A DNA stretch of 63,276 nt, counting the filler, from Octopus bimaculoides (lineage: Eukaryota), in the NCBI RefSeq assembly GCF_001194135.2. It is 8 parts of 7 records of this genome, joined end to end, with 100 filler letters (N's around TTAATTAATTAA, not from the genome) between each part and the next. Parts side by side here need not be neighbours in the genome. Positions count along the whole stretch, not along the records: positions 34,523 to 56,322 come from NC_068998.1; 7 more parts are not named here. One strand, written 5' to 3'. Under the pieces are notes generated by a model, which made no database searches, was not told the origin of the DNA, and saw only the letters and a list, made by a program, of their open reading frames with translations. A program made the translations under genes and the position numbers. Positions within the stretch are counted from its first letter, which is position 1. Every line of letters starts with the position of its first letter. Positions 34,745 through 56,322 of the stretch are shown here, one piece after another.

Positions 34745-34929
34745 TTAATGGTTACATTGTATAATTTTTCCGATCAGAGCGCTCGACGGAAAATCGATAG
34801 AAATAAAACCAAACCGTTTCTTGGGTTTCTTTTCTTCTAAGTAGTTCTCGAGTTGAGGGTTGATACGATCAGCTACGGCATTGGGATAAGCCCCAGAGCT
34901 GGCTCCGCTGGTGAAGGTTACATAAATAA
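34745..34929 (-). CDS. PI-PLC coding exon 2 (terminal; 61 aa + TAA), not in the ORF track
   Basis: Acceptor TTTCTTTCCTATTTGCAG|TT. The phase-1 join restores the frame and gives VIYVTFTSGASSGAYPNAVADRINPQLENYLEEKKPKKRFGFISIDFPSSALIGKIIQCNH*, the expected family C-terminus (Y.TFxSG, RINP, GxxxxDFP with the Asp274 equivalent). No N gap lies between the exons. Confidence 0.92.
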
Positions 34930-35054
34930 CTGCAAATAGGAAAGAAAATACAAGCGGTTATAAATACATCGACATTGTTCATAATTGTTGTCGTCGTCGT
35001 AAAATAATTTAATATGATTGTGGTTATTTATCCTGTGGTGGTAAACGAAGATGG

Positions 35055-35186
35055 GAAGGCGCGTGGTTTAGTATTTAAGGTGTTGCACTCCCGATCGTCG
35101 TTTCGTTTCACGGACCAGGCAGTGTATTGTAATGTTGGGCAGAACACTTCATTTAACGTTATTCCTGTCTACTCAGCTGTAAATGA
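35055..35186 (+). mobile_element. tRNA-SINE 5' half inside the PI-PLC intron (antisense to the gene)
   Basis: GGAAGGCGCGTGGTTTAGT head...CACTTCATTT...ACTCAGCTG. Confidence 0.7.
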
Positions 35187-35232
35187 CTTCCAGAAATAGC
35201 TGGGAAATTAAATCTGAGATGGTGTAAAACCA

Positions 35233-35372
35233 GTGGAGGCGCATGGATTAATGGTTAGGCTGTTGCACTCATGATCGCAAGATTGTGGTTTCGATTCCTG
35301 AAGCGGGTGACGTGTTGTGCTCTTGAGCAAAGCACTTCATTTCAGGCTGCTCTATTGCACTCAGCTGGCAAC
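35233..35372 (+). mobile_element. Second tRNA-SINE 5' half inside the PI-PLC intron
   Basis: GTGGAGGCGCATGG..AATGG A box, GGTTTCGATTCC B box, CTTGAGCAAAGCACTT...ACTCAGCTG. Confidence 0.75.
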
Positions 35373-35740
35373 AGAAACCAGCTCTATGAGTCTATATGAC
35401 TCGGGAAGTATCTTTATCCCTTTAACCTATATTTAGGAACGCGGGTTTATGACTCATCTCGGATGAAGAATGGATCTTATTACGTAGATTGAGTAAATGG
35501 ATGATGGAAGCTGGCGAATAGGTGATATCAATAACACTGTGTAAGAAAATTCTTTGTTTTTGGTAGATTGTTAGGGGCCTGACATAGGGCAAAGTACGAT
35601 AGGTACTACACCAATTGTAACTACTGTTGTTGCTGAATTGTAGATACTTGGAAATATGCACTTTAGAGTACAATGGGTATGGTACCACACAGTAGGTATT
35701 CTGTAGTGGTTAGTAAAGTCATTAGTAAAATCCAACTTAC

Positions 35741-36383
35741 CGGAACTTCCTTCGTCCGCACCGGAAGTGTCAAGCTGACGTTTGACATGCTGCCATTTCT
35801 CTTCTATATGTGAGTACAGAATTGTAGGCACATACCAATGATCCTCAATTGAGAACAAACCACCATTGTAATTCAATCCATACGCGGATCCCGGGAAATT
35901 TTGCAAGATAACAATTTTGCCACGGATATCTCCAAGTTTGGGAATAGAAGAGAAGGAACTCGAAATTCGACCATTCTCGATATATCGTTGGATAGAGACT
36001 TTGAGCGTTTCTTCATAGGAACGGTTATTTTCAACCGTTTCATATTCCTCTTTAATACGCATAAAGATCGTCTCTGTGGGGTAGTCTGTTAAAAAGCGAA
36101 GCGAGTTTCTCAGAACCGTGTCAATATCAGCATATTGATATTTGACTCCGTGGTGTATATGTAGCCCATTACGAAAATGCCGACAACGAATGTCTAAGAA
36201 ACGTATGCCTCCCAATAGCTGTGGATATAACTCCCAGTATTGACACGCGATGAGGCTTCCGCCGTAAAAAGCCATTGTGTTGTGTGTGCCTGGCACGGTT
36301 AAGTGTGCTACAGACGTTTGATCAGAGATTGTCGACATCCAGTTGGGGAAATTGGTTTCGGGTTCACTGAAACCGGAGCCCAT
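35741..36383 (-). CDS. Bacterial-type PI-PLC (1-phosphatidylinositol phosphodiesterase-like, PI-PLC X domain), coding exon 1 (214 codons + 1 nt)
   Basis: First in-frame ATG (CCCATC-ATG-G, A at -3, G at +4) gives MGSGFSEPETNFPNWMSTISDQTSVAHLTVPGTHN...QLLGGIRFLDIRCR...IHHG...MRIKEE...IRGKIVIL...IEDHW. These match B. cereus PI-PLC family motifs (His32 in GTH, Arg69 in DIR, His82 in HHG, RGKIV). The exon ends at a canonical donor, TCCG|GTAAGT (35741|35740). The ORF-track start at 36545 is a TTG. Confidence 0.92.
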
Positions 36384-36423
36384 GATGGGAACGTGATGCG
36401 CCTTTCCCTGGAGTCTCCCTAGT

Positions 36424-36461
36424 CTATAACCAACCGGAAACCGGAGGCAATTGATATATAA
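36424..36461 (-). promoter_or_regulatory. Ambiguous upstream signal of PI-PLC: TATA-like TATATAT with tandem CCGGA boxes, or a 3' splice site
   Basis: Minus strand reads CTTATATATCAATTGCCTCCGGTTTCCGGTTGGTTATAG, 41-78 nt upstream of the ATG. It fits either a core promoter or a pyrimidine tract with a TAG acceptor ending at 36424. Confidence 0.3.
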
Positions 36462-36929
36462 GAAGATGATGTTTCGACACAAGAGTACAAGGTGAGTGCC
36501 ACAACTACACCGCTGAACTGCAATGGATACACTCGTTAACAGCAATAAAACGTTCTTTTTGTTTCTTTTTCTTTATATTATTTTTTCTTCCAATTGATTT
36601 TCAACTTGTAACTATTAAAACACGAACGTGTGATGTGAACCGGTTGTCTTCCCTTGGATTAGTAACGATGTTGAGCTTTTGCTAATTTAGATAAGAGTCT
36701 GTGCGTTCTATTGGAATTTTCTAATAAATCATTGCTATAAATCACAGCCTCATTAGGAATCCAGTTGTCCGCTTTTAACATTGAACAGAACAGAATGAAG
36801 CCAAAACATCAGAACCTGGTTTCGACGTCAGTTTGCCTTTCTCTCAGGTTTTCCCTGGAAACAAAATTAAAAAGAAGATATCATCCTCGTACATCGTAGC
36901 TTTGACAGGAGAGTCAAGGAAAACGCGCG

Positions 36930-36970
<41 letters not shown>

Positions 36971-38176
36971 GTATGCATGTAAGCATGTATATATGTATGC
37001 ATTTATTTATAAACGCAAGTGTTTAAGTATGAATTAAGAGCAGCTCGAGGGATATAAGCAATATCGACCACACATACACAAAGCATGTGTTTTGCTAGTT
37101 CGCGGGAAGGATGGGATCTATTTTAAAACGGGGGCGCCAGTTTTCATTTATGTTTTATGTAGTGTTTTTGGTACGGAAAGACTTTCAAACTTCGTATACT
37201 TAACTATTTTGTGTTATAGAACAGAAAAATATTTTTGTATTCGAATTTATTTCATGTAAAAAATTGTCTTATTTCGNNNNNNNNNNNNNNNNNNNNNNNN
37301 NNNNNNNNNNNNNNNNNNNNNNNNNNNNNNNNNNNNNNNNNNNNNNNNNNNNNNNNNNNNNNNNNNNNNNNNNNNNNNNNNNNNNNNNNNNNNNNNNNNN
37401 NNNNNNNNNNNNNNNNNNNNNNNNNNNNNNNNNNNNNNNNNNNNNNNNNNNNNNNNNNNNNNNNNNNNNNNNNNNNNNNNNNNNNNNNNNNNNNNNNNNN
37501 NNNNNNNNNNNNNNNNNNNNNNNNNNNNNNNNNNNNNNNNNNNNNNNNNNNNNNNNNNNNNNNNNNNNNNNNNNNNNNNNNNNNNNNNNNNNNNNNNNNN
37601 NNNNNNNNNNNNNNNNNNNNNNNNNNNNNNNNNNNNNNNNNNNNNNNNNNNNNNNNNNNNNNNNNNNNNNNNNNNNNNNNNNNNNNNNNNNNNNNNNNNN
37701 NNNNNNNNNNNNNNNNNNNNNNNNNNNNNNNNNNNNNNNNNNNNNNNNNNNNNNNNNNNNNNNNNNNNNNNNNNNNNNNNNNNNNNNNNNNNNNNNNNNN
37801 NNNNNNNNNNNNNNNNNNNNNNNNNNNNNNNNNNNNNNNNNNNNNNNNNNNNNNNNNNNNNNNNNNNNNNNNNNNNNNNNNNNNNNNNNNNNNNNNNNNN
37901 NNNNNNNNNNATTACGAGCCTGGAAAAAAAGTATTTGAATTTGAATTTTTATTTGGAAACACCCTATATCCACTTCCCAACTTTCCCGCTTTCAAAAAGC
38001 TAAAAATTCCGTATGCTTTACGTCTGAAACAGCAGACGAAAAAATATCAAACAATCAGAAAACTCGATATGCTAGGAACAACAGCTAAACGTCTGGAAAA
38101 TATTTTTTATTTCTCATTTAAAAAAAAAAAGATAAACGACGTAATCACCAGCATTTTTTTTCAGTTATTTTATATA

Positions 38177-38747: not shown

Positions 38748-39568
38748 TTCCAGACAGAAGTTGGTTGTAGATAAACATAGTTCAATACAGTTATGATTGG
38801 GTAAAATTTCAGTACGAATTATTTGCTATTTCTATATAAACACAACACGAAAATAATGTGACTTGGCATAAAAAAAACAAAAAAACTTTTGGCAATCTTC
38901 ACTTGCCATATACACGCGCAACTCTAATTGAAATCAACTTTTTTTCCAGGTTTTAATTTATGATGAGCAAATTTAAAAACCTCATTTTCGTATGAACTTA
39001 AAATAAAATTTTTTCAGAAATCGTACAAAATATATAAAACACCTAAAAAAAAAAACCAATTGCGTGTGATTACGTCGTTTGTCTTCGAAAGAAAGAAAGA
39101 AAAAAAAGGGGTCGTTAAATGAGAAGAAAAATATTTTTTAGACATTTAGCTGTTGTTTCTAATAAATCGAGTTTTCTAGTGAAGGTTTGATACCTTTTCG
39201 TTTGCTGTTTCAGCAGAAATCTGCGCATGCGTAAAACATACGGAGGTTTTAACTTTNNNNNNNNNNNNNNNNNNNNNNNNNNNNNNNNNNNNNNNNNNNN
39301 NNNNNNNNNNNNNNNNNNNNNNNNNNNNNNNNNNNNNNNNNNNNNNNNNNNNNNNNNNNNNNNNNNNNNNNNNNNNNNNNNNNNNNNNNNNNNNNNNNNN
39401 NNNNNNNNNNNNNNNNNNNNNNNNNNNNNNNNNNNNNNNNNNNNNNNNNNNNNNNNNNNNNNNNNNNNNNNNNNNNNNNNNNNNNNNNNAATGTATGCGA
39501 GAACAAGGACGAAAAAATAATGGAGAAATGTTACACAGCTAAAAATACAAACAGCAAGACAATATATA

Positions 39569-39823: not shown

Positions 39824-41689
39824 TATATATTGTCTTGCTGTTTGTATTTTTAGCTGTGTAACATTTCTCCATTATTTTTTCGTCCTTGTTCTCGCATACA
39901 TTCGCTTGCTTTCTTCCAAAGAATCTAGTGCTCTTAGCTCAGATTTTCTTGGGGCCGGCCAGATTGGAGCAGTCTTGAGTGTAACCGGCCAAAACTGCAA
40001 AGATGATCTGGAACTCGACTGACGATGGAAAGCTCCGAATGACCCTTCCTTGTATTTTCCTGTCCTTCTTTGTATCGCCTAACTGTCTATGTATTGTTGT
40101 CGCCTGTATATNNNNNNNNNNNNNNNNNNNNNNNNNNNNNNNNNNNNNNNNNNNNNNNNNNNNNNNNNNNNNNNNNNNNNNNNNNNNNNNNNNNNNNNNN
40201 NNNNNNNNNNNNNNNNNNNNNNNNNNNNNNNNNNNNNNNNNNNNNNNNNNNNNNNNNNNNNNNNNNNNNNNNNNNNNNNNNNNNNNNNNNNNNNNNNNNN
40301 NNNNNNNNNNNNNNNNNNNNNNNNNNNNNNNNNNNNNNNNNNNNNNNNNNNNNNNNNNNNNNNNNNNNNNNNNNNNNNNNNNNNNNNNNNNNNNNNNNNN
40401 NNNNNNNNNNNNNNNNNNNNNNNNNNNNNNNNNNNNNNNNNNNNNNNNNNNNNNNNNNNNNNNNNNNNNNNNNNNNNNNNNNNNNNNNNNNNNNNNNNNN
40501 NNNNNATATGTGGAAAGAAGAAATCTACTACCACGCAGGGAAAAATATAGGAGGATTTGTTTTGGGGTTTGAAAATGAACCTGAATCAAAAAAATGTGTA
40601 GTCGTTTTAAAATAAAGTTATTCACATACCAAACTAGTTCCGACAATTTTTTGCTTATCAATGGTACGAATATATAAAAAAAGGTGGGGGTTAGGAGATC
40701 TTAAAGTTACAAGGTAAAAATTGAACAAACATGTTTAAACCGTCAAATGTTCAAATGTTCACAGAAATTTCAGTGAGTTTCACAAGAATAGATTGTAATA
40801 TCGCTGCAAATGTTCGGCGAAGATCATAACAAATGTACATTATTGAAAGTTCATTCATACTGAGTTTTTATAAAATAAGTGCAGAAGAAAGAGAAAAAGG
40901 TGGAGAGAAAGCAAAAAAGAAGTTTGTTTTTTACAATTTCTGTCGTGGTGCATGTAGTCCTTTTTTCAATTTCAGCCTCAGTGTACTAGTCACTTCACCA
41001 TTCACTGCTTGTTGGAGTTGAGAGTAGTATGAGCCGTCCAATCTTTTAGTATATAACATGTAGCTTTACAGAAAATGGTCTAATTTTTGATTGGTTATAA
41101 TTTTGATGACAGTTTATCCTTTTTCTTGTGTGGGTTGTGATAAGAATACTTTCACTTTGGCAGTGTAGTGTTTTAGTTGGTTAACAAGAAACAAGTTCCG
41201 ACTGCCTGTGATTTTCATGATATCACTTTGTTTTGAACAAAAATATTTTCCGTTCTGGGCAAAATACAATCTTATTTCTACCTTTATTTGTTTTTAATCT
41301 TTACGTGTCCTCAACAAAGACACTATTATCGTGATCACCAGGGCTATTACACCAATCTTGTTTATTAACTTGACATTACTTCTTATCTTTATGATTTGTA
41401 ATATTTTAAACGATTGATTCGTTGCCCCAAATCACCCGATAAGGTGGTGATTTGACTGAGTCATGGCTGTATGATAAAGAAGTTCGCTTCGCAACCTCGT
41501 GGTTTCCAGGTTCGATCTACTTTACAGGCAGTATTTTCGATAGTTGTCCAATATTCTTGTGTCCGAGCGGTCAATATCTACTGAGTAGGACTGGGTAGTC
41601 GAAAAGTGTGACCAAGCTCGTCATGATGCCTTGTTCATCATCAAAAATCCTTCAAATAGAAAGCCAGAATTATATAAGAAAAAGCTCCA

Positions 41690-42127: not shown

Positions 42128-42430
42128 CACGGGTTGGACAAAATAATGGAAACACCTTAAAATTTCAAACAAATTTATTTTAATATGGGGTAAGACCGCC
42201 TTTGGCACTAATTACAGCTTGAATTCTACGAGGTAAGGACTCGTACAAAGTTTGAATTGTTTCCAAAGGAATTTTTGTCCATTCTTCGGCTAAAACAGTC
42301 TCCAGTTCTTGTAGTGATGATGGTGGAGGATATCGACTCTTTACTTGTTTTTCTAAAATACACCATAAATGTCCAATGATATTGAGATCTGAAGATTGTG
42401 GTGGCCAGATAAGATGTTCAACTTCTCCAA
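42128..42430 (-). mobile_element. Tc1 transposon 3' end (transposase C-terminus + TIR)
   Basis: WPPQSSDLNIIGHLW...LPRRIQAVISAKGGLTPY*, AATAAA next to the stop, terminal TA|CACGGGTTGGACAAAATAATGGAAACACC. Confidence 0.9.
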
Positions 42431-45400
42431 TCACGTTAGTGTTTTGTTGTTTAAGCCAAAGCAAAGCTTCATCGAGTCAACCTATAATCAAACACATTGA
42501 ACCCGCGACTACCTTTCGCCTTTTGCTTGTTTTAGACATTTGGCTGCGGCCATGCTGGGACACCGCCTTCAAAGGTTCAGTCAAACAAACCGACTCCAGT
42601 ACTTATCTTTTCATATCTAATACTTATTCCGTCGGTGTGTCTCTAGGCGAACTGCTAAGTTACGAGGACGTAAACAAGCCAACGCCGGTTATCATGTGGT
42701 GTGAGAACAAACGCAATCACAAAGATCCACACACACATACACATAAACACAACACACAGACACATCCACATGACAGGCTGCCACACAGTTTCCATCCATC
42801 AAGTTCACTCCCAAGGCACTGGTCTGCTGGTGACTATAGTAGAAGACCCACTTGTCATAGTTACCTTACAGTGGGATTGAACCTGAAGCCACGTGGTTAC
42901 AAAGCGAGCTTCTTAACCACACATCTGTGCCTGCGTTGATTTTTTTTCTTCCTTTTTTTTTTGTGTCTACCTACTAAGATAGTAGGGCGTGTGATCTGAG
43001 GGAGATTTAGTTGCTATTTTTGACAGGTCCAATGACCACGTCGTACAGTGTTTCTTCAGGACTTCTGACTGGTCCAGTCCAGTGTTTTGATAAAACATAG
43101 AATCAGCGTACGATGTGTCTTGAGGGAGATTTAGCTGCTATTTTGTGATACATCCAATGACCACATACGAGCTGGGTACCCAAAAGTAACCGGAAACGTT
43201 CTCTGTGAGACATACCCGTGAGACATATACTGAAAATACCAGATAATCAAGGTTGAAACATATTTGGATACTTGCCAATTTTTCTATATTTATTTATCAA
43301 AAGAATTGGCGAGTAAAAAAGAAGTCTGGCACAAGGACTGCAATTTCAGGGACGGACGTAGTTCGATTATATTAAACACGGTGCTCTAACGGATACTTAA
43401 ATGAAAGGTAAACTCGACCTCGGCTGTGTTTGATCTCAGAGGGTAAAGACAGACGAAATACCGCTAAGCATTTCGCCCAGCGTGCCAACGTTTCTGCCAA
43501 ATCGCTGCCTTGCAAATTCTTCTAATAATAATATTAATTGAAAAAAATACTAGAACAATGAAAAGGCATTAAAAGGAATTCTTTATTTATAAATAAATTC
43601 GATTTTCGATTGGTTTATTTCTGCCCAGCATCATAGCAGACTTGGAATTACTGTGCTGGTTGCTATTCAACTTTAGGTTCCAAGATCAGTTTGCGCTCCA
43701 TTTACCACGAAGCGCTTCAGAGAAACCTGACAAATAAAGCATAAAGTACATGTGTTGGTTATTTTTGAGGTTATTGACTGTTTCCTATAAATCTTTCCTC
43801 GACCAACCAGGCATTTAAGTGTTCTTCATAAATTATTGATGTTTCTCAATTCCTTTCCTGTATCCTGAAGCAATCGGCATCAATACAAGATGTACTGGCG
43901 ATTTGAGCTTCTTTTTTCCTCTTTTTTAATTATGTGACTTGGTTAAGTTCAAGAGGTTAAACTTTCTCCATCTAAACACCAGAAAGCGGAGAAGATTGAT
44001 CCCTTAAGAAAAGCAATTTATGACTCACAACATTCATTATAGCCAGCATAGCTAGAACTAGTAATAACAAGGCACTAAATTTACAAAATCAGTAGAGCGC
44101 CAGACCAAGTAAATGCCACGTGACATTTAGTTGCATATCATTCATTAGATTCTGAGTAAGGTTGTGAGCTGGTAGAATCCTCACTGCCCGGATAAAATAG
44201 TTAACAGCATTTCTTCCGGCGCTTTATGTTCTGAGTTGAAATACAGCAGAGATCGACTTTGTCCATCCTTTCGGAGTCGACAAAATAAAGTACCAGTTGA
44301 GTACTGGGGTCGGTGTTATTAACTGGTCCCTAACTCACAAATAAATTTCAGGCATTTTTCCAATAATAGAAAGGACTCATTAGTTTCTGCGTTCAGGCGG
44401 TGAGCTGGCATAAATTGCTAGCGAGTGGGACAAAATGCTTAGCTGCATTTCTGTGTAAGTATGTATGTACGTGTACGTATGTATGTATGTAAATGGATAT
44501 AGATGCATACATATATATTGTGTAAGTGTGTATGTATGTATGTATTATGTGGAGGCGCAATGGCCCAGTGGTTAAGGCAGCGGACTCGCGGTCATNNNNN
44601 NNNNNTCATAGCAGACTTGGAATTACTGTGCTGGTTGCTATTCAACTTTAGGTTCCAAGATCAGTTTGCGCTCCATTTACCACGAAGCGCTTCAGAGAAA
44701 CCTGACAAATAAAGCATAAAGTACATGTGTTGGTTATTTTTGAGGTTATTGACTGTTTCCTATAAATCTTTCCTCGACCAACCAGACAGTCGTTCGTTCA
44801 AGTGTTTCTTCATAAATTATTGATGTTTCTCAATTCCTTTCCTGTATCCTGAAGCAATCGGCATCAATACAAGATGTACTGGCGATTTGAGCTTCTTTTT
44901 TCCTCTTTTTTAATTATGTGACTTGGTTAAGTTCAAGAGGTTAAACTTTCTCCATCTAAACACCAGAAAGCGGAGAAGATTGATCCCTTAAGAAAAGCAA
45001 TTTATGACTCACAACATTCATTATAGCCAGCATAGCTAGAACTAGTAATAACAAGGCACTAAATTTACAAANNNNNNNNNNNNNNNNNNNNNNNNNNNNN
45101 NNNNNNNNNNNNNNNNNNNNNNNNNNNNNNNNNNNNNNNNNNNNNNNNNNNNNNNNNNNNNNNNNNNNNNNNNNNNNNNNNNNNNNNNNNNNNNNNNNNN
45201 NNNNNNNNNNNNNNNNNNNNNNNNNNNNNNNNNNNNNNNNNNNNNNNNNNNNNNNNNNNNNNNNNNNNNNNNNNNNNNNNNNNNNNNNNNNNNNNNNNNN
45301 NNNNNNNNNNNNNNNNNNNNNNNNNNNNNNNNNNNNNNNNNNNNNNNNNNNNNNNNNNNNNNNNNNNNNNNNNNNNNNNNNNNNNNNNNNNNNNNNNNNN

Positions 45401-45875
45401 NNNNNNNNNNNNNNNNNNNNNNNNNNNNNNNNNNNNNNNNNNNNNNNNNNNNNNNNNNNNNNNNNNNNNNNNNNNNNNNNNNNNNNNNNNNNNNNNNNNN
45501 NNNNNNNNNNNNNNNNNNNNNNNNNNNNNNNNNNNNNNNNNNNNNNNNNNNNNNNNNNNNNNNNNNNNNNNNNNNNNNNNNNNNNNNNNNNNNNNNNNNN
45601 NNNNNNNNNNNNNNNNNNNNNNNNNNNNNNNNNNNNNNNNNNNNNNNNNNNNNNNNNNNNNNNNNNNNNNNNNNNNNNNNNNNNNNNNNNNNNNNNNNNN
45701 NNNNNNNNNNNNNNNNNNNNNNNNNNNNNNNNNNNNNNNNNNNNNNNNNNNNNNNNNNNNNNNNNNNNNNNNNNNNNNNNNNNNNNNNNNNNNNNNNNNN
45801 NNNNNNNNNNNNNNNNNNNNNNNNNNNNNNNNNNNNNNNNNNNNNNNNNNNNNNNNNNNNNNNNNNNNNNNNNNG

Positions 45876-46112: not shown

Positions 46113-46684
46113 TATGTATGTATGTATGTATGTATGTATGTATGTATGTATGTGTATGTATGTATGTATGTATGTATGTATGTAGGCGTGCGTATGTGTG
46201 TATGCATGTTTATGTGTGTATATGTGAGTGTGCATGTATCTGTGCATATGTTGTTTGGTATGATGTATTTTTTAATTCCCTTTTATTGGATTCTTAATAA
46301 AGTTGTCGTCTCTTCTATAATTAGCCTACATTTAATTCATCGCTCTATCCTTTGTGAATGGTTTGTGTATTTTTAACGTGTGTAATGTCTAATGTTATTT
46401 TTGCATGGTATTTCTACCTCAATTCTTCCGCGGCTTAGTCTGCTAGTCTTTTAGAATCTCCCATGTTAATGGGTGTTTGTTTTCTTCTCTGGATTTCTTT
46501 ATTTAATGCCACGTTTATAAAAAGACAATCTAAATGCGCTTCTAAGCAGGGATTTTATTATCGACATTTTGTAACTGTGTGGATATTGACTGTCTCCGTA
46601 CAGTGACATATGTTTGTTTGTGTCTTTGGCGTACATGGACGTGATGTGTCCATTATTTTACGAAGTATGAAATTATGAAATTAT

Positions 46685-48216: not shown

Positions 48217-48282
<66 letters not shown>

Positions 48283-49915
48283 AGAAAGTGAGATAATTAT
48301 CTTTCTCACTTATCACTCAGTGTATCTGATTAAAAATACGCCAGATTTGCGAATGTGAATATTTTCAGAAACTACAAAGCTACATTAACCGAATTGTATG
48401 AGAAAATAAAAATAACTAACACTGACAGGCAGAATCAATACAAAAGAGCTTTGTCATTTCTAAACTAGCGTTAATTTATTTTGTTTAGTAAGCACTAAAA
48501 AAAAAAATCCAATAAGAATTATTTACGCAGTGAGAAAAAGACAACACTAACCCAATAACTAATATTTTTTTTTTAATTATGAAACTGAAGTAGTTCAAGA
48601 TAAAAAAAAAAATCTTTATTTGTATGACATACTTAGCGTATGTCGTAGAAGAGCCGGTAGCGGCAGTATTCGTCCGAGAAAAGATTCAAAACACAATAGG
48701 CTTCAGAACTAGGCGAAACGAAATCATCCCGGAAACGGCCGCGAAAGTGACAGATGTGCCTGTCAACGTTTTTGTAGCTTATCAATGTCATGCACACGCG
48801 TCATTTGTGACACAAAAATCATACCGGCTACTATAACGAAGATAAAGTAAGGGAAACAACTCCAGACGTGCTTCAGTTTTTATTAAACCTGCTTAACAAA
48901 GCATAATCTTTTCTGCATTTACCATACTTAGGTTTTCAGTTCAAATACCAAACTAGACTGATTTTCCCTTTCAGACTTTCAAAATTGGTGCAATAACTAC
49001 CTATCAAATATTTGGGAAAAATTTTGACTGCCGTCATTCCCATATTTAAGACCTTCTGCCTATGTCAATAATTCTTAAAATCATTAAGGCATTTGAAAGC
49101 ACAAGATTAAGATAATCGTTAGAGCGACGGATAATATACCTTCTGGTATTAGTTCAGGCTCTTTACAATTTTTACAGATAATTTGCATTATTTAAACCTG
49201 CGACCATGCCGAAGTGCCGCCTTAATAGATGTTAGTTGAAGAAATCAACACTAGGATATTTTCTTTGTTAGCCTAGTAGTTATCCTATCGTTCTTTTTTG
49301 CTGAATCGCTAAGTTACGGGGATATAAACACACCAGCATCAGTTGTCAAACGATGGTGGGGGGACAAACACAGACACACACATACACACACAAATATATA
49401 TGTAAGTAGAGTTAGCAGTTGGGATAACCATCTAAGGGATAAGAATATCCGTTCTTACAACCGGTATCAATTACCTATTTTAACCCTGGGCATGGGTATG
49501 CAAGCACACTATGCTCATAGGGTACAGGTAATAACAGAATAAAGAAGAGTTTATCATGAATGAAATTTATAATAAGCAGAAAATGGAGAACACTTTTAAT
49601 CAGCAAACAAACAAATTGACCAACATCGGTTAATCATTTTTCAATACAAAGCTTAACATTGCTTACGGCCGTTTCGGCTACCAGTGCCTACAAAGAAAAT
49701 TCCGAAAATAATAATATTCGTCATCTTTATAGTACATTCGATCTAGTACATGGAGCTTCATCAGAATGAATACAAATACATAAAATAAAAGAGAGGTAGT
49801 TGGAGTATAATATGGATGATAGAACGGAATCTTTCACAGCCATTGGATCCCGTATAACAATTAAAGACCATAAGGACAATTACCTAAGTAATACACAAAT
49901 CAGATACTGGTATCG

Positions 49916-49916
<1 letters not shown>

Positions 49917-49948
<32 letters not shown>

Positions 49949-50080
49949 ATTGTTGTTATTGTTGTTATTGTTGTTGTTGTTGTTGTTGTTCTTCTTCTTC
50001 TTCTTCTTCTTCTTCTTCTTCTTCTTCTTCTCTCTCTCTCTCTCTCTCTCTCTCCCTCTTCCCCCTCTCTCTCTCTCTCT
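49917..50080. repeat. Compound (TTG)n(TTC)n(TC)n microsatellite
   Basis: Direct reading. Many more (TG)n, (TA)n, (AG)n, (TATG)n and (TTA)n tracts occur throughout the window. Confidence 0.97.
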
Positions 50081-50529
50081 GACCTTCTTCTTTGACTATT
50101 TCTCTCCGGAAGAAAACGGTAGTTCAAACCTAGAGAAGGGATGGATTTAAGCTACCCAAGACATACCATATATTCCTCGCATATGGAACATGGCTACACG
50201 GCAGACTAATTCTGTTGCACAGTAGATACTAGTTACATCTTTACAAATTAAAACCTAACCAGATTCAATAATCTTATCCGAGAAAAAGAATAAAAAAACA
50301 TTTTTTTGTTGAAAACTTATCTTTGACTTAAATGCCTCGATTATATAAATGTAAATATAATTGTCCATCAACGATACGGGAGAGGTATAGCGAACATACA
50401 TACATACATACATACATACATACATACATACATACATCTAGGTTAGAAACTGGCTCTTTCTCTATTGGCAAGAAATCTTGAAATAAAACCGAATAATGAC
50501 ATACATACATACATACACACACGCATACA

Positions 50530-50632
<103 letters not shown>

Positions 50633-51089
50633 GCGCGCGCATGCATTTTTTAATGCTCTTTTTCGGTTCCCGTTATCGAATTTCAATCGGACCGAGGCTC
50701 CGCCTTCAATGGTTTTCTTCGATTATATCGATCCCAGCATTTTTTTTTATAATACTTACTTTATCGATCTCTATTTACTGAATGGCTAATTTCTCTTTCC
50801 GCATAAATGAACATCACTCAACAAAATTACTTTTCATCGCCGCCCTGATTCACTACGTCACACACATACCCACACGCCCTCCACCCCAACACACATACAC
50901 ACACGCACTCACACATACACACACAGGCGCACACACTCACACATACATGCTCACATCCGAATGCGCGCATATTTGGTTCTAGAAATGAAGGAAATGCATG
51001 TAGTAAAATAGACATCAATGTATCATACATAAAGTATAAACACCATCGATAGGTCTGAGATAACATCTCTTTTACACGTGCTATGTTAA

Positions 51090-54762: not shown

Positions 54763-55216
54763 NNNNNNNNNNNNNNNNNNNNNNNNNNNNNNNNNNNNNN
54801 NNNNNNNNNNNNNNNNNNNNNNNNNNNNNNNNNNNNNNNNNNNNNNNNNNNNNNNNNNNNNNNNNNNNNNNNNNNNNNNNNNNNNNNNNNNNNNNNNNNN
54901 NNNNNNNNNNNNNNNNNNNNNNNNNNNNNNNNNNNNNNNNNNNNNNNNNNNNNNNNNNNNNNNNNNNNNNNNNNNNNNNNNNNNNNNNNNNNNNNNNNNN
55001 NNNNNNNNNNNNNNNNNNNNNNNNNNNNNNNNNNNNNNNNNNNNNNNNNNNNNNNNNNNNNNNNNNNNNNNNNNNNNNNNNNNNNNNNNNNNNNNNNNNN
55101 NNNNNNNNNNNNNNNNNNNNNNNNNNNNNNNNNNNNNNNNNNNNNNNNNNNNNNNNNNNNNNNNNNNNNNNNNNNNNNNNNNNNNNNNNNNNNNNNNNNN
55201 NNNNNNNNNNNNNNNN

Positions 55217-55283
<67 letters not shown>

Positions 55284-56107: not shown

Positions 56108-56322
56108 GACCAACCAACCAGCCAACCAACCAACCAACCAACCAATCAACCAGCCAGTCAACCAACCAGCCAACCAGCCAACCAGCCAACCGACCAAGCA
56201 ACCAAGCAAGCAACCAGCCAATCAACCAACCAGTCATCCAACCAGCCAGCCAGCCAACCGGCCAAAAAAATCAACATGTCAACCAACCAGCCAGCCAGCC
56301 AGCCAACCAACCAAACGGACAA
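56108..56322. repeat. Compound (CCAA/CCAG)n microsatellite
   Basis: Direct reading. Confidence 0.95.

What the first reader, a model, noticed from the sequence alone, without database searches (positions are those of the whole stretch)
34745..36383. Complete, spliced, bacterial-type PI-PLC gene whose catalytic C-terminus is hidden in an unannotated exon
Seen: the 324-aa track ORF is a read-through. A GTAAGT donor at 35740 and an acceptor at 34930 join in frame to give a 275-aa single-domain protein ending ...RFGFISIDFPSSALIGKIIQCNH*. Established: Bacillus/Listeria PI-PLCs are Ca2+-independent TIM-barrel enzymes that cleave PI and GPI anchors using His32/His82/Asp274/Arg69, and lack the PH/EF/Y/C2 domains of animal PLCs. 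Inference: this animal has an intact stand-alone PI/GPI-cleaving enzyme outside the canonical PLC-beta/gamma/delta set.
Basis: partly seen in the sequence, partly recalled or inferred. Interest (0 to 1): 0.8.

Follow-up and report, generated by a model that had tools for sequence, protein, structure and literature searches.

The report
Octopus bacterial-type PI-PLC gene, already annotated
This is a real, intact two-exon Octopus bimaculoides gene for a small bacterial-type phosphatidylinositol phospholipase C, but public annotation already holds exactly this 275-aa protein, and it belongs to a widespread, untested animal family.

Summary

That protein is 100% identical over its full length to the public entry '1-phosphatidylinositol phosphodiesterase [Octopus bimaculoides]', so the exon is not unannotated.

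Sequence and predicted fold place it with bacterial single-domain PI-PLCs:
- B. cereus enzyme, E 1.5e-25.
- Family profile against the Listeria enzyme, E 1e-62.
- AlphaFold pLDDT 94, TM 0.80-0.86 to bacterial structures against about 0.57 to PLC-delta.

His32, Arg69, His82, Asp274 and Lys115 are kept. Asp33 is Asn, as in most of the family.

Relatives at 40-49% identity occur in fish, amphibians, hemichordates, a starfish and a limpet. In the four loci checked their coding sequence has no intron. The intron is shared only by octopods, so it was gained there.

The protein has no signal peptide, starts with the myristoylation-type motif MGSGFS, and lacks the membrane-inserting tryptophans of the Bacillus enzyme. 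I therefore infer a cytosolic PI-cleaving enzyme, not a secreted GPI-anchor cleaver. No activity or transcript data exist. Interest is low.

The parts
35741..36383 (-). Coding exon 1 (643 nt, residues 1-214 plus the first base of codon 215). ATG at 36383-36381 sits in a good Kozak context (A at -3, G at +4). It encodes H34, N35, D64, R66, H78, K111 and D181.
   Evidence: tblastn 100% identity over residues 1-214.
34930..35740 (-). Phase-1 intron of 811 nt, running GTAAGT...TTTGCAG. Only its first 173 nt and last 177 nt are conserved with O. vulgaris.
   Evidence: The intron sits at the same codon in O. vulgaris (about 3.98 kb) and Argonauta (about 3.87 kb). It is absent from the gar, Ptychodera, Lottia and ENA eukaryote orthologues.
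34745..34929 (-). Coding exon 2 (185 nt, residues 215-275 plus TAA at 34747-34745). It encodes the last two barrel strands and D260, the Asp274 equivalent (codon 34795-34793).
35735..35740 (-). Splice donor GTAAGT.
   Evidence: Identical GTAAGT in O. vulgaris (L008), Argonauta (L007) and two further octopod contigs (L009, L010).
34930..34950 (-). Pyrimidine tract and AG acceptor (TATTTTCTTTCCTATTTGCAG).
   Evidence: O. vulgaris has TTTTTTTTTCTGTTTGCAG and Argonauta CTCTCTTTCTAG at the same codon.
36366..36380 (-). Codons 2-6 (GSGFS): Gly2 and Ser6 of an N-myristoylation-type motif.
   Evidence: Matches PROSITE-style G-{EDRKHPFYW}-x(2)-[STAGCN]-{P}. Conserved as MGAGFS in O. vulgaris and MGSDFS in the L009 species. 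Twenty homologues without a hydrophobic N-terminus also start MG. The modification itself is not shown.
36279..36284 (-). Codons for H34 (equivalent to His32, the general base) and N35 (the Asp33 position).
   Evidence: PGTHNT is the family consensus.
36150..36188 (-). Stretch from codon R66 (equivalent to Arg69, 36188-36186) to codon H78 (equivalent to His82, 36152-36150).
   Evidence: Alignment. Numbering.
36443..36474 (-). Block AAACATCATCTTC..TATATATCAATTGCCTCC with a TATA-like core (36459-36454), about 75 nt upstream of the ATG. It is a candidate core promoter.
   Evidence: The block is nearly invariant in three Octopus-group genomes, whereas the whole upstream region is only 74% identical to the L009 species. 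Promoter function is inferred, not shown.
35571..36545 (-). Mechanical 324-aa ORF (TTG start) that reads from the 5' leader through exon 1 into the intron. It is not the gene product.
   Evidence: Its tail has no homologue.
35057..35342 (-). Two SINE-like copies of about 100 bp each inside the intron (35342-35237 and 35154-35057, 67% identical).
   Evidence: A third related copy lies about 7 kb downstream in the public assembly (L001 18569-18640). This part of the intron has no match at the O. vulgaris locus.

Best explanation
This is an intact, two-exon Octopus bimaculoides gene, already annotated as 1-phosphatidylinositol phosphodiesterase. It encodes a 275-aa single-domain TIM-barrel enzyme of the bacterial PI-PLC type (EC 4.6.1.13).

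Shown:
- the gene structure;
- identity with the public protein model;
- sequence homology and predicted fold;
- retention of His34, Arg66, His78, Asp260 and Lys111 (Bacillus His32, Arg69, His82, Asp274, Lys115);
- conservation of the splice sites in octopods;
- long-term purifying selection.

Inferred mechanism: His34, oriented by Asp260, deprotonates the inositol 2-OH. That oxygen attacks the phosphate held by Arg66, so no Ca2+ is needed. His78, partnered here by Asn35 rather than Asp, protonates the leaving diacylglycerol. The products are DAG and inositol 1,2-cyclic phosphate.

Inferred location: the protein has no signal peptide and starts MGSGFS. It lacks the Bacillus interfacial residues Trp47, Trp242 and the Tyr246-251 strip. 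It probably stays in the cytosol, is N-myristoylated, and acts on non-phosphorylated PI of cytosolic leaflets, not on extracellular GPI anchors.

Inferred history: the family is old in animals and normally intronless in its coding sequence. Octopods gained one phase-1 intron at codon 215.
For: Structure and junction. Public identity: P0001 is 100%/100% identical and named by NCBI; its gene range is 1639 bp on CM046618.1 of GCA_001194135.2. Family: Pfam PI-PLC-X 1.1e-9, above the cut-off. phmmer against B. cereus PI-PLC gives 1.5e-25 over residues 10-262. The family profile gives 1e-62 against Listeria 1aod and 3e-50 against Bacillus. AF2 gives pLDDT 94.1 and pTM 0.92. The top 24 Foldseek hits are all bacterial PI-PLCs at TM 0.80-0.86, against 0.57 for PLC-delta1. 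Catalytic map; roles of the residues per PMC9572076 and bioRxiv 10.64898/2026.07.28.741319. Arg rather than Asp at the metal position; compare PDB 1t6m (the R70D enzyme and calcium). No hydrophobic N-terminus, MG start and motif match. Trp47, Trp242 and the Tyr strip fall in gaps or are substituted; interfacial site per PMC9572076. A conserved TATA-like block just upstream argues against a missed signal-peptide exon. Selection: versus Argonauta pN 0.195 against pS 0.80; versus the L009 species dN/dS 0.34, with exon identity 86% against flank identity 74-78%. Intron gain.
Against: There is no transcript, protein or enzyme evidence for the octopus gene or for any animal member (searches found no study). 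Asp33, partner of the general acid, is Asn, so activity could be lowered or altered. Arg163, an inositol ligand in Bacillus, aligns with Asn162. Between O. bimaculoides and O. vulgaris dN/dS is 0.71, and the exons (93% and 88%) are no better conserved than the flanks (91-93%). That suggests weak recent constraint. Myristoylation rests on a permissive motif only. Argonauta and the L010 species start MLNFPS instead of MG, so the feature is not general in octopods. Fish orthologues are secreted and co-regulated with digestive enzymes (PMC7092794, PMC8187396), so a missed upstream signal-peptide exon cannot be fully excluded.
Confidence: 0.75

Rival explanations
1. Secreted PI/GPI-anchor-cleaving enzyme of saliva, venom or gut. 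The true transcript would carry an upstream exon with a signal peptide, or the protein would leave the cell by another route.
For: Many family members have hydrophobic N-terminal signals: teleosts, frogs, Lottia and a spider mite. The medaka orthologue falls together with elastases, carboxypeptidases and bile-salt lipase in intestinal transcriptomes. Bacterial relatives are secreted (PMC5773145).
Against: The public model and three Octopus-group genomes start at the same MG(S/A)(G/D)FS, with a good Kozak context and a conserved TATA-like block 75 nt upstream. There is no hydrophobic stretch in the first 45 residues: the maximum Kyte-Doolittle score is 0.82, against 2-3.5 in the secreted members. 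The V-VI connector is shorter than in the GPI-poor Listeria enzyme (PMC5773145).
Confidence: 0.12
2. A decaying or functionally released copy: an intact ORF that no longer works as a PI-PLC. It could be a pseudoenzyme or lipid-binding protein, or it could use another substrate.
For: Asp33 is Asn and Arg163 is Asn. dN/dS is 0.71 against O. vulgaris, and the exons are no more conserved than the flanks. O. vulgaris has several tandem, partly broken copies (P0002-P0004). No transcript-derived contig was found among Logan hits.
Against: The ORF is open in five octopod genomes, with splice sites kept. pN is far below pS over the Octopus-Argonauta distance. Asn at the Asp33 position is the consensus of the whole animal family and of some bacterial relatives, so it is not a lesion of this copy. 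His32, Arg69, His82, Asp274 and Lys115 are all kept. AF2 is very confident.
Confidence: 0.1
3. Bacterial contamination or a very recent bacterial insertion in the assembly.
For: The closest non-animal relatives are soil bacteria at 31-41% identity: Corallococcus, the Nocardiopsis group, Chryseobacterium and Paenibacillus. The coding sequence is intronless in most animals.
Against: The octopus gene has a spliceosomal intron with SINE-like inserts. It lies on a 55.6-Mb chromosome record. It has collinear orthologues with conserved flanks in O. vulgaris. It is closer to other animal proteins (40-49%) than to any bacterium. GC is 38%, like its surroundings.
Confidence: 0.01

Closest known systems
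Annotated Octopus bimaculoides protein '1-phosphatidylinositol phosphodiesterase' (P0001; GCA_001194135.2, CM046618.1)
   Same: Identical 275-aa sequence. The gene range has the same length, 1639 bp.
   Different: Nothing. It is the same gene model. The annotation is automatic and no function has been tested.
Animal '1-phosphatidylinositol phosphodiesterase(-like)' family (zebrafish/medaka si:dkey-266f7.9; gar, caecilian, frog, hemichordate, starfish and Lottia homologues)
   Same: 40-49% identity over 95-100% of the length. Same single domain and the same PGTH(N/D)T, DIRCRH, IHHG and MDFP motifs.
   Different: In the four members checked (gar, Ptychodera, Lottia, an ENA eukaryote contig) the coding sequence is one exon; octopods have an intron at codon 215. 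Teleost, frog and Lottia members carry signal peptides. The octopus, gar, caecilian, some hemichordate and starfish members start MG with no signal.
Listeria monocytogenes PI-PLC (PlcA; PDB 1aod, 2plc)
   Same: Best profile match (E 1e-62, aligned to the C-terminal ...IIK(S/N)N) and best Foldseek E-value. Similar size. Short strand V-VI connector.
   Different: About 28% identity. The Listeria enzyme is secreted and has Asp at position 33. The octopus protein has Asn, no signal peptide, and a connector eight residues shorter still.
Bacillus cereus/thuringiensis PI-PLC (PDB 1ptd, 1gym)
   Same: TIM-barrel fold at TM 0.85. His32, Arg69, His82, Asp274, Lys115 and Asp67 are conserved.
   Different: About 27% identity. 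Differences: Asp33 to Asn and Arg163 to Asn; Trp47 and Trp242 are deleted; Tyr246/247/248/251 are replaced by N/A/V/R; 16 residues are missing between strands V and VI. The Bacillus enzyme cleaves GPI anchors, which the octopus protein probably does not.
Environmental bacterial PI-PLC homologues (Corallococcus, Nocardiopsis group, Chryseobacterium, Paenibacillus, Streptomyces/Kitasatospora)
   Same: 31-41% identity over nearly the full length, much closer than the studied Firmicute enzymes.
   Different: They fall on the other side of a weakly supported split (50% bootstrap) from the animal sequences in an NJ tree. All are uncharacterised.
Eukaryotic PLC-beta/gamma/delta and the X-domain-only PLCXD1-3 proteins
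   Same: They share the X-box half of the barrel (Pfam PF00388) and the His-Asn dipeptide at the first catalytic histidine. The His-Asn point comes from my own knowledge of PLC-delta1 His311/Asn312.
   Different: Foldseek TM is only 0.36-0.61. The octopus protein has no PH, EF or C2 domains, and has Arg where the Ca2+ ligands sit. The relation to PLCXD1-3 was not tested; none appeared among the 120 named hits.

Membership tests
Bacterial-type PI-PLC (EC 4.6.1.13, Bacillus/Listeria/Staphylococcus kind) | Single (beta/alpha)-barrel domain of about 270-300 aa, with no PH, EF-hand or C2 domains | tested here: met
   The protein is 275 aa and its only Pfam hit is PI-PLC-X. The AF2 model has pLDDT 94. 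The top 24 Foldseek hits are bacterial PI-PLCs at TM 0.80-0.86.
Bacterial-type PI-PLC (EC 4.6.1.13, Bacillus/Listeria/Staphylococcus kind) | Full-length sequence homology to solved bacterial enzymes, including the C-terminal half | tested here: met
   phmmer gives 1.5e-25 over residues 10-262. The family profile gives 1e-62 over positions 15-277. Exon 2 alone hits chain residues 228-276.
Bacterial-type PI-PLC (EC 4.6.1.13, Bacillus/Listeria/Staphylococcus kind) | General base His32 with Asp274 | tested here: met
   H34 and D260. Both are invariant or nearly so in the 44-sequence alignment.
Bacterial-type PI-PLC (EC 4.6.1.13, Bacillus/Listeria/Staphylococcus kind) | Arg69 in place of the Ca2+ of eukaryotic PLCs (metal independence) | tested here: met
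   R66 in the motif LDIRCRH. Metal independence itself is inferred.
Bacterial-type PI-PLC (EC 4.6.1.13, Bacillus/Listeria/Staphylococcus kind) | General acid His82 paired with Asp33 | tested here: not met
   His82 is kept as H78, but the Asp33 position is N35. Asn is the consensus of the animal family and occurs in some bacterial-looking relatives. The effect on catalysis is unknown.
Bacterial-type PI-PLC (EC 4.6.1.13, Bacillus/Listeria/Staphylococcus kind) | Secretion signal and the interfacial binding residues Trp47/Trp242 (Bacillus) | tested here: not met
   There is no hydrophobic N-terminus. Trp47 and Trp242 fall in alignment gaps and the Tyr246-251 strip is substituted (site defined in PMC9572076).
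Bacterial-type PI-PLC (EC 4.6.1.13, Bacillus/Listeria/Staphylococcus kind) | Cleavage of PI to DAG plus inositol 1,2-cyclic phosphate; cleavage of GPI anchors | not testable with these tools
   This needs an enzyme assay. The V-VI connector is 26 residues from the conserved Gly to the conserved Asp, against 42 in Bacillus and 34 in Listeria. That argues against GPI cleavage (role of strand Vb per PMC5773145).
Animal 1-phosphatidylinositol phosphodiesterase(-like) family (si:dkey-266f7.9 group) | At least 40% identity over nearly the full length to annotated animal members, with shared motifs | tested here: met
   It is identical to the annotated O. bimaculoides member.
Eukaryotic signalling PLC (beta/gamma/delta/epsilon/zeta/eta) | X and Y boxes with PH/EF/C2 modules and acidic Ca2+ ligands at the active site | tested here: not met
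   Single domain. Arg sits at the metal position. Foldseek TM is 0.36-0.61 at E 1e-5 or worse.
PLCXD1-3 (animal X-domain-only PLCs) | Orthology to vertebrate PLCXD proteins | not tested
   No PLCXD sequence was in hand. None of the 120 listed hits is named PLCXD1-3.
N-myristoylated proteins | Gly2 after the initiator Met, with small or uncharged residue 3 and Ser/Thr/Ala/Gly/Cys/Asn at residue 6 | tested here: met
   MGSGFSE fits G-{EDRKHPFYW}-x(2)-[STAGCN]-{P}, as do 15 of the 25 homologues that start MG, this protein included. Whether the lipid is actually attached cannot be tested here.

The most novel reading that the evidence does not exclude
Animals may carry an old, uncharacterised family of bacterial-type, Ca2+-independent PI-PLCs. 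It may have been acquired once from bacteria. It has switched repeatedly between a secreted digestive form and an N-myristoylated cytosolic form. The octopus gene would be of the cytosolic form and would make DAG and cyclic inositol phosphate from plain PI, independently of the receptor-coupled PLCs. This would be a second, unstudied route of phosphoinositide turnover.
Probability: 0.3. Interest if true: 0.45.

Novelty: already known. Interest (0 to 1): 0.2.

Why it matters
For this window it matters little. The gene and its splice are already in the public annotation under the right enzyme name.

The wider point is modest but real. A bacterial-type PI-PLC family is present in many animal phyla. 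It has secreted and probably lipid-anchored cytosolic versions, and nobody appears to have tested one. An assay of one member would show whether animals have a Ca2+-independent route for cleaving PI itself besides the classical PLCs and the PLCXD proteins. The octopod-specific intron in an otherwise single-exon coding sequence is a tidy example of intron gain.

Tried and rejected
- NCBIfam gave no hit.
- Rfam and tRNA scans of the piece found nothing, so the intron repeats could not be tied to a tRNA-derived SINE.
- The sigma-70 promoter and terminator scan was at chance level and is irrelevant to a eukaryotic gene.
- The Logan contigs L009 and L010 were hoped to be transcripts. They proved to be genomic contigs of other octopods that read through the donor. 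I therefore found no RNA evidence for the junction.
- No second copy of the gene lies in the piece or within 10 kb either side in the public assembly.
- I considered a deep split between MG-type and signal-peptide-type paralogues and rejected it. In the NJ trees the clades follow taxonomy, and both N-terminal types occur inside hemichordates.
- These trees are rough (NJ, 255-275 columns, backbone support 50% or less). They cannot settle a single versus multiple bacterial origin.
- The first tree script timed out. One search was a mis-specified alignment and carries no information.
- Literature searches found no paper on the animal family. They found only three transcriptome tables that list the fish gene.
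- Wei et al. 2005 (strand Vb) is not held in the library, so I cite it through PMC5773145.
- The Bacillus thuringiensis plasmid protein P0098 (PI-PLC fused to lectin-type domains, 43% identity) was deliberately not fetched.
- The bacterial genome scan was run with 100-base flanks, so neighbouring genes of pathogens were not pulled in.
Full report
**What is in the sequence.** The gene lies on the minus strand.
- The mechanical 324-aa ORF (35571..36545) starts at an upstream TTG and runs through a splice donor into intron sequence.
- The first ATG of that frame is at 36383, with A at -3 and G at +4.
- Exon 1 runs from there to 35741 (643 nt) and is followed by GTAAGT.
- After an 811-nt intron, a pyrimidine tract and an AG (34931-34930) precede exon 2, 34929..34745 (185 nt with TAA).
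- The intron is phase 1: Val215 is split G|TT.

**Is the junction real?** Four independent lines say yes.
- The spliced protein aligns without a gap across residues 214/215 to B. cereus PI-PLC (E 1.5e-25).
- It aligns as one uninterrupted tblastn segment to the intronless orthologues of gar, Ptychodera, Lottia and an unidentified eukaryote.
- Exon 2 alone finds residues 228-276 of the Bacillus enzyme as its ten best PDB hits (E 0.008). The read-through tail finds nothing.
- The GTAAGT donor is conserved in O. vulgaris, Argonauta hians and two further octopod contigs. The acceptor sits at the same codon in the two that reach exon 2.
- I found no transcript evidence. The two Logan contigs that looked promising are genomic.

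**It is already annotated.** The product is 100% identical over 100% of its length to a protein held by NCBI, UniRef and EukProt and named '1-phosphatidylinositol phosphodiesterase [Octopus bimaculoides]'. Its gene range on chromosome record CM046618.1 of GCA_001194135.2 is 1639 bp, the same length as 34745-36383. The exon is therefore 'hidden' only from an ORF track.

**What the protein is.**
- Pfam gives PI-PLC-X above its cut-off.
- All 25 significant PDB sequence hits are bacterial PI-PLCs.
- A profile of 44 family members matches the Listeria enzyme at 1e-62 and the Bacillus enzyme at 3e-50, over the whole length.
- AlphaFold2 with that alignment gives pLDDT 94.1 and pTM 0.92.
- The 24 best Foldseek hits are Listeria, Staphylococcus and Bacillus PI-PLCs at TM 0.80-0.86. 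PLC-delta1 reaches 0.57 and PLC-gamma/beta 0.36-0.61.
- The bacterial-type assignment is therefore solid.

**Active site.** I use the Bacillus numbering and the residue roles summarised in PMC9572076 and bioRxiv 10.64898/2026.07.28.741319.

| Bacillus residue | Octopus residue |
|---|---|
| His32 | H34 |
| Asp67 | D64 |
| Arg69 | R66 |
| His82 | H78 |
| Lys115 | K111 |
| Asp274 | D260 (in exon 2) |
| Asp33 | N35 (changed) |
| Arg163 | N162 (changed) |

- Asn at the Asp33 position is not a defect of this copy. PGTHNT is the consensus of the family, and Asp, Gln, Glu, His and Arg also occur there.
- By motif, SIEDHW corresponds to the Asp198/Tyr200 region. This is my inference. One search aligns it with the Listeria IQDDY.
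- Arg at the position where an Arg-to-Asp mutant enzyme becomes calcium-dependent (PDB 1t6m, listed) points to a metal-independent enzyme. This too is an inference.

**Where it probably acts.**
- The first 45 residues have no hydrophobic stretch: the maximum Kyte-Doolittle score is 0.82, against 2-3.5 in members with signal peptides.
- The N-terminus MGSGFSE fits the N-myristoylation pattern.
- O. vulgaris has MGAGFS and another Octopus-group species has MGSDFS.
- Among the 120 homologues listed, 20 that lack a hydrophobic N-terminus start with MG; only a few that lack one start otherwise.
- A block with a TATA-like core at 36459-36454 is almost invariant in three species, although the region around it has diverged to 74% identity. 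This argues that the ATG lies in the first exon.
- The Bacillus membrane-insertion residues Trp47 and Trp242 fall in alignment gaps. The phosphatidylcholine-binding tyrosines 246/247/248/251 are N/A/V/R here (PMC9572076).
- The connector between strands V and VI is 26 residues from the conserved Gly to the conserved Asp. It is 42 residues in Bacillus and 34 in Listeria. The Listeria enzyme's weak action on GPI anchors is ascribed to loss of the small strand Vb (PMC5773145, citing Wei et al. 2005). That this strand lies in the V-VI connector is my recollection, not something I could check here.
- Together these points favour a cytosolic, lipid-anchored enzyme acting on PI and not a secreted GPI-anchor cleaver. 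None of this has been shown experimentally.

**Evolution within octopods.**
- The intron sits at the same codon in O. vulgaris (about 3.98 kb) and Argonauta (about 3.87 kb).
- Only its ends are conserved. The O. bimaculoides middle holds two SINE-like copies of about 100 bp.
- The gar, Ptychodera, Lottia and ENA eukaryote genes have a single coding exon. The intron is thus an octopod, or possibly cephalopod, gain.
- Against Argonauta, pN is 0.195 and pS 0.80.
- Against the L009 species, dN/dS is 0.34, with exon identity 86% and flank identity 74-78%.
- Against O. vulgaris, dN/dS is 0.71, and the exons (93% and 88%) are no better conserved than the flanks (91-93%).
- Long-term constraint is therefore clear, while recent constraint looks weak.
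- O. vulgaris also has tandem, partly mis-modelled copies.

**Distribution and origin.**
- Named homologues at 40-49% identity occur in gar, many teleosts, caecilians, frogs, two hemichordates and a starfish. Lottia is at 39% and a spider mite at 41%.
- The best are Corallococcus (39%), the Nocardiopsis group, Chryseobacterium, Paenibacillus and Streptomyces/Kitasatospora, at 31-41%. All are far closer than the Firmicute enzymes that have been studied (about 27%).
- In rough NJ trees the animal sequences group by taxon. Except for the spider mite, they fall on one side of a split from the bacteria, with only 50% support.
- Both N-terminal types occur inside hemichordates.
- A single old origin in animals is plausible but not established.

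**Literature.**
- I found no paper on the animal family.
- The fish gene si:dkey-266f7.9 appears only in transcriptome tables.
- In medaka intestine it falls together with elastases, carboxypeptidases and bile-salt lipase when IL-17 signalling is removed. That fits a digestive role for the secreted fish form.
- A compendium of metazoan gene transfers does not mention phospholipases in its main text.

**Surroundings.**
- The rest of the piece holds six assembly gaps, many microsatellites and one weak Tc1/mariner-type transposase remnant.
- No other gene is annotated within 10 kb on either side in the public assembly.

**Verdict.**
- It is not unannotated, it probably does not cleave GPI anchors, and one of the five canonical catalytic residues differs.
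- Novelty: already known. Interest: low.
- The one open and testable point is what this animal family of bacterial-type PI-PLCs does.

Noticed in passing
window 35057-35342 (intron): Two diverged copies (67% identity) of a SINE-like element of about 100 bp lie in the middle of the intron. A third related copy lies about 7 kb downstream in the public assembly (L001 18569-18640). This part of the intron has no counterpart at the O. vulgaris locus. No tRNA or Rfam match was found.
   Followed up: partly
window 36443-36474: A block with a TATA-like core is nearly invariant among three Octopus-group genomes, about 75 nt upstream of the ATG. It is a candidate core promoter.
   Followed up: partly
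window 42180-42464 (-): This 94-aa ORF resembles the C-terminal end of a Tc1/mariner-type DDE transposase. The Pfam DDE_3 hit has E 9e-4, below the curated cut-off. It is probably a transposon remnant.
   Followed up: partly
L008 9893-10535 (O. vulgaris): The O. vulgaris genome encodes a full exon 1 starting MGAGFSEPE. The public models P0003 and P0004 begin about 36 residues later, at MAFYGG and MSFYGG. P0002 looks like a fusion of two tandem partial copies. The O. vulgaris models seem to need revision.
   Followed up: partly
P0084 (Tetranychus) in the trees: The spider-mite homologue has a signal peptide and a C-terminal extension of about 110 aa. It groups with bacterial and metagenomic sequences rather than with the other animals. 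This hints at a separate acquisition.
   Followed up: no
L005 / L006 (ENA ERZ26695388 contigs of 171 kb and 853 kb): A group of MGN(I/A/T)N... homologues (P0052, P0067, P0075, P0078, P0085, P0087, P0088, P0101) comes from long ENA contigs. The one checked (P0052, loci L005/L006) has sparse gene calls and retroelement domains (rve, Integrase_H2C2). It probably belongs to an unidentified eukaryote with several copies of the family.
   Followed up: no
P0098: A Bacillus thuringiensis plasmid protein joins a PI-PLC domain (43% identity to the octopus protein over 81% of its length) to ricin-type lectin and HA-17-like domains. It was not fetched or analysed.
   Followed up: no
window 37277-37910, 39257-39489, 40112-40505, 44596-44605, 45072-45874, 54763-55216: These are runs of N (assembly gaps) totalling 2528 of the 21800 bases of the piece. 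ORFs that span them are artefacts.
   Followed up: yes
window 46113-46239, 48217-48293, 49917-50031, 50394-50633, 55231-55281, 56109-56314: The region upstream of the gene is dense in microsatellites and low-complexity arrays: (TATG)n, (GA)n, (TTG)n/(TTC)n, (ACAT)n, (GT)n and (ACCA)n. The long 'QPTN' ORFs at the piece's end are translations of the (ACCA)n array.
   Followed up: yes
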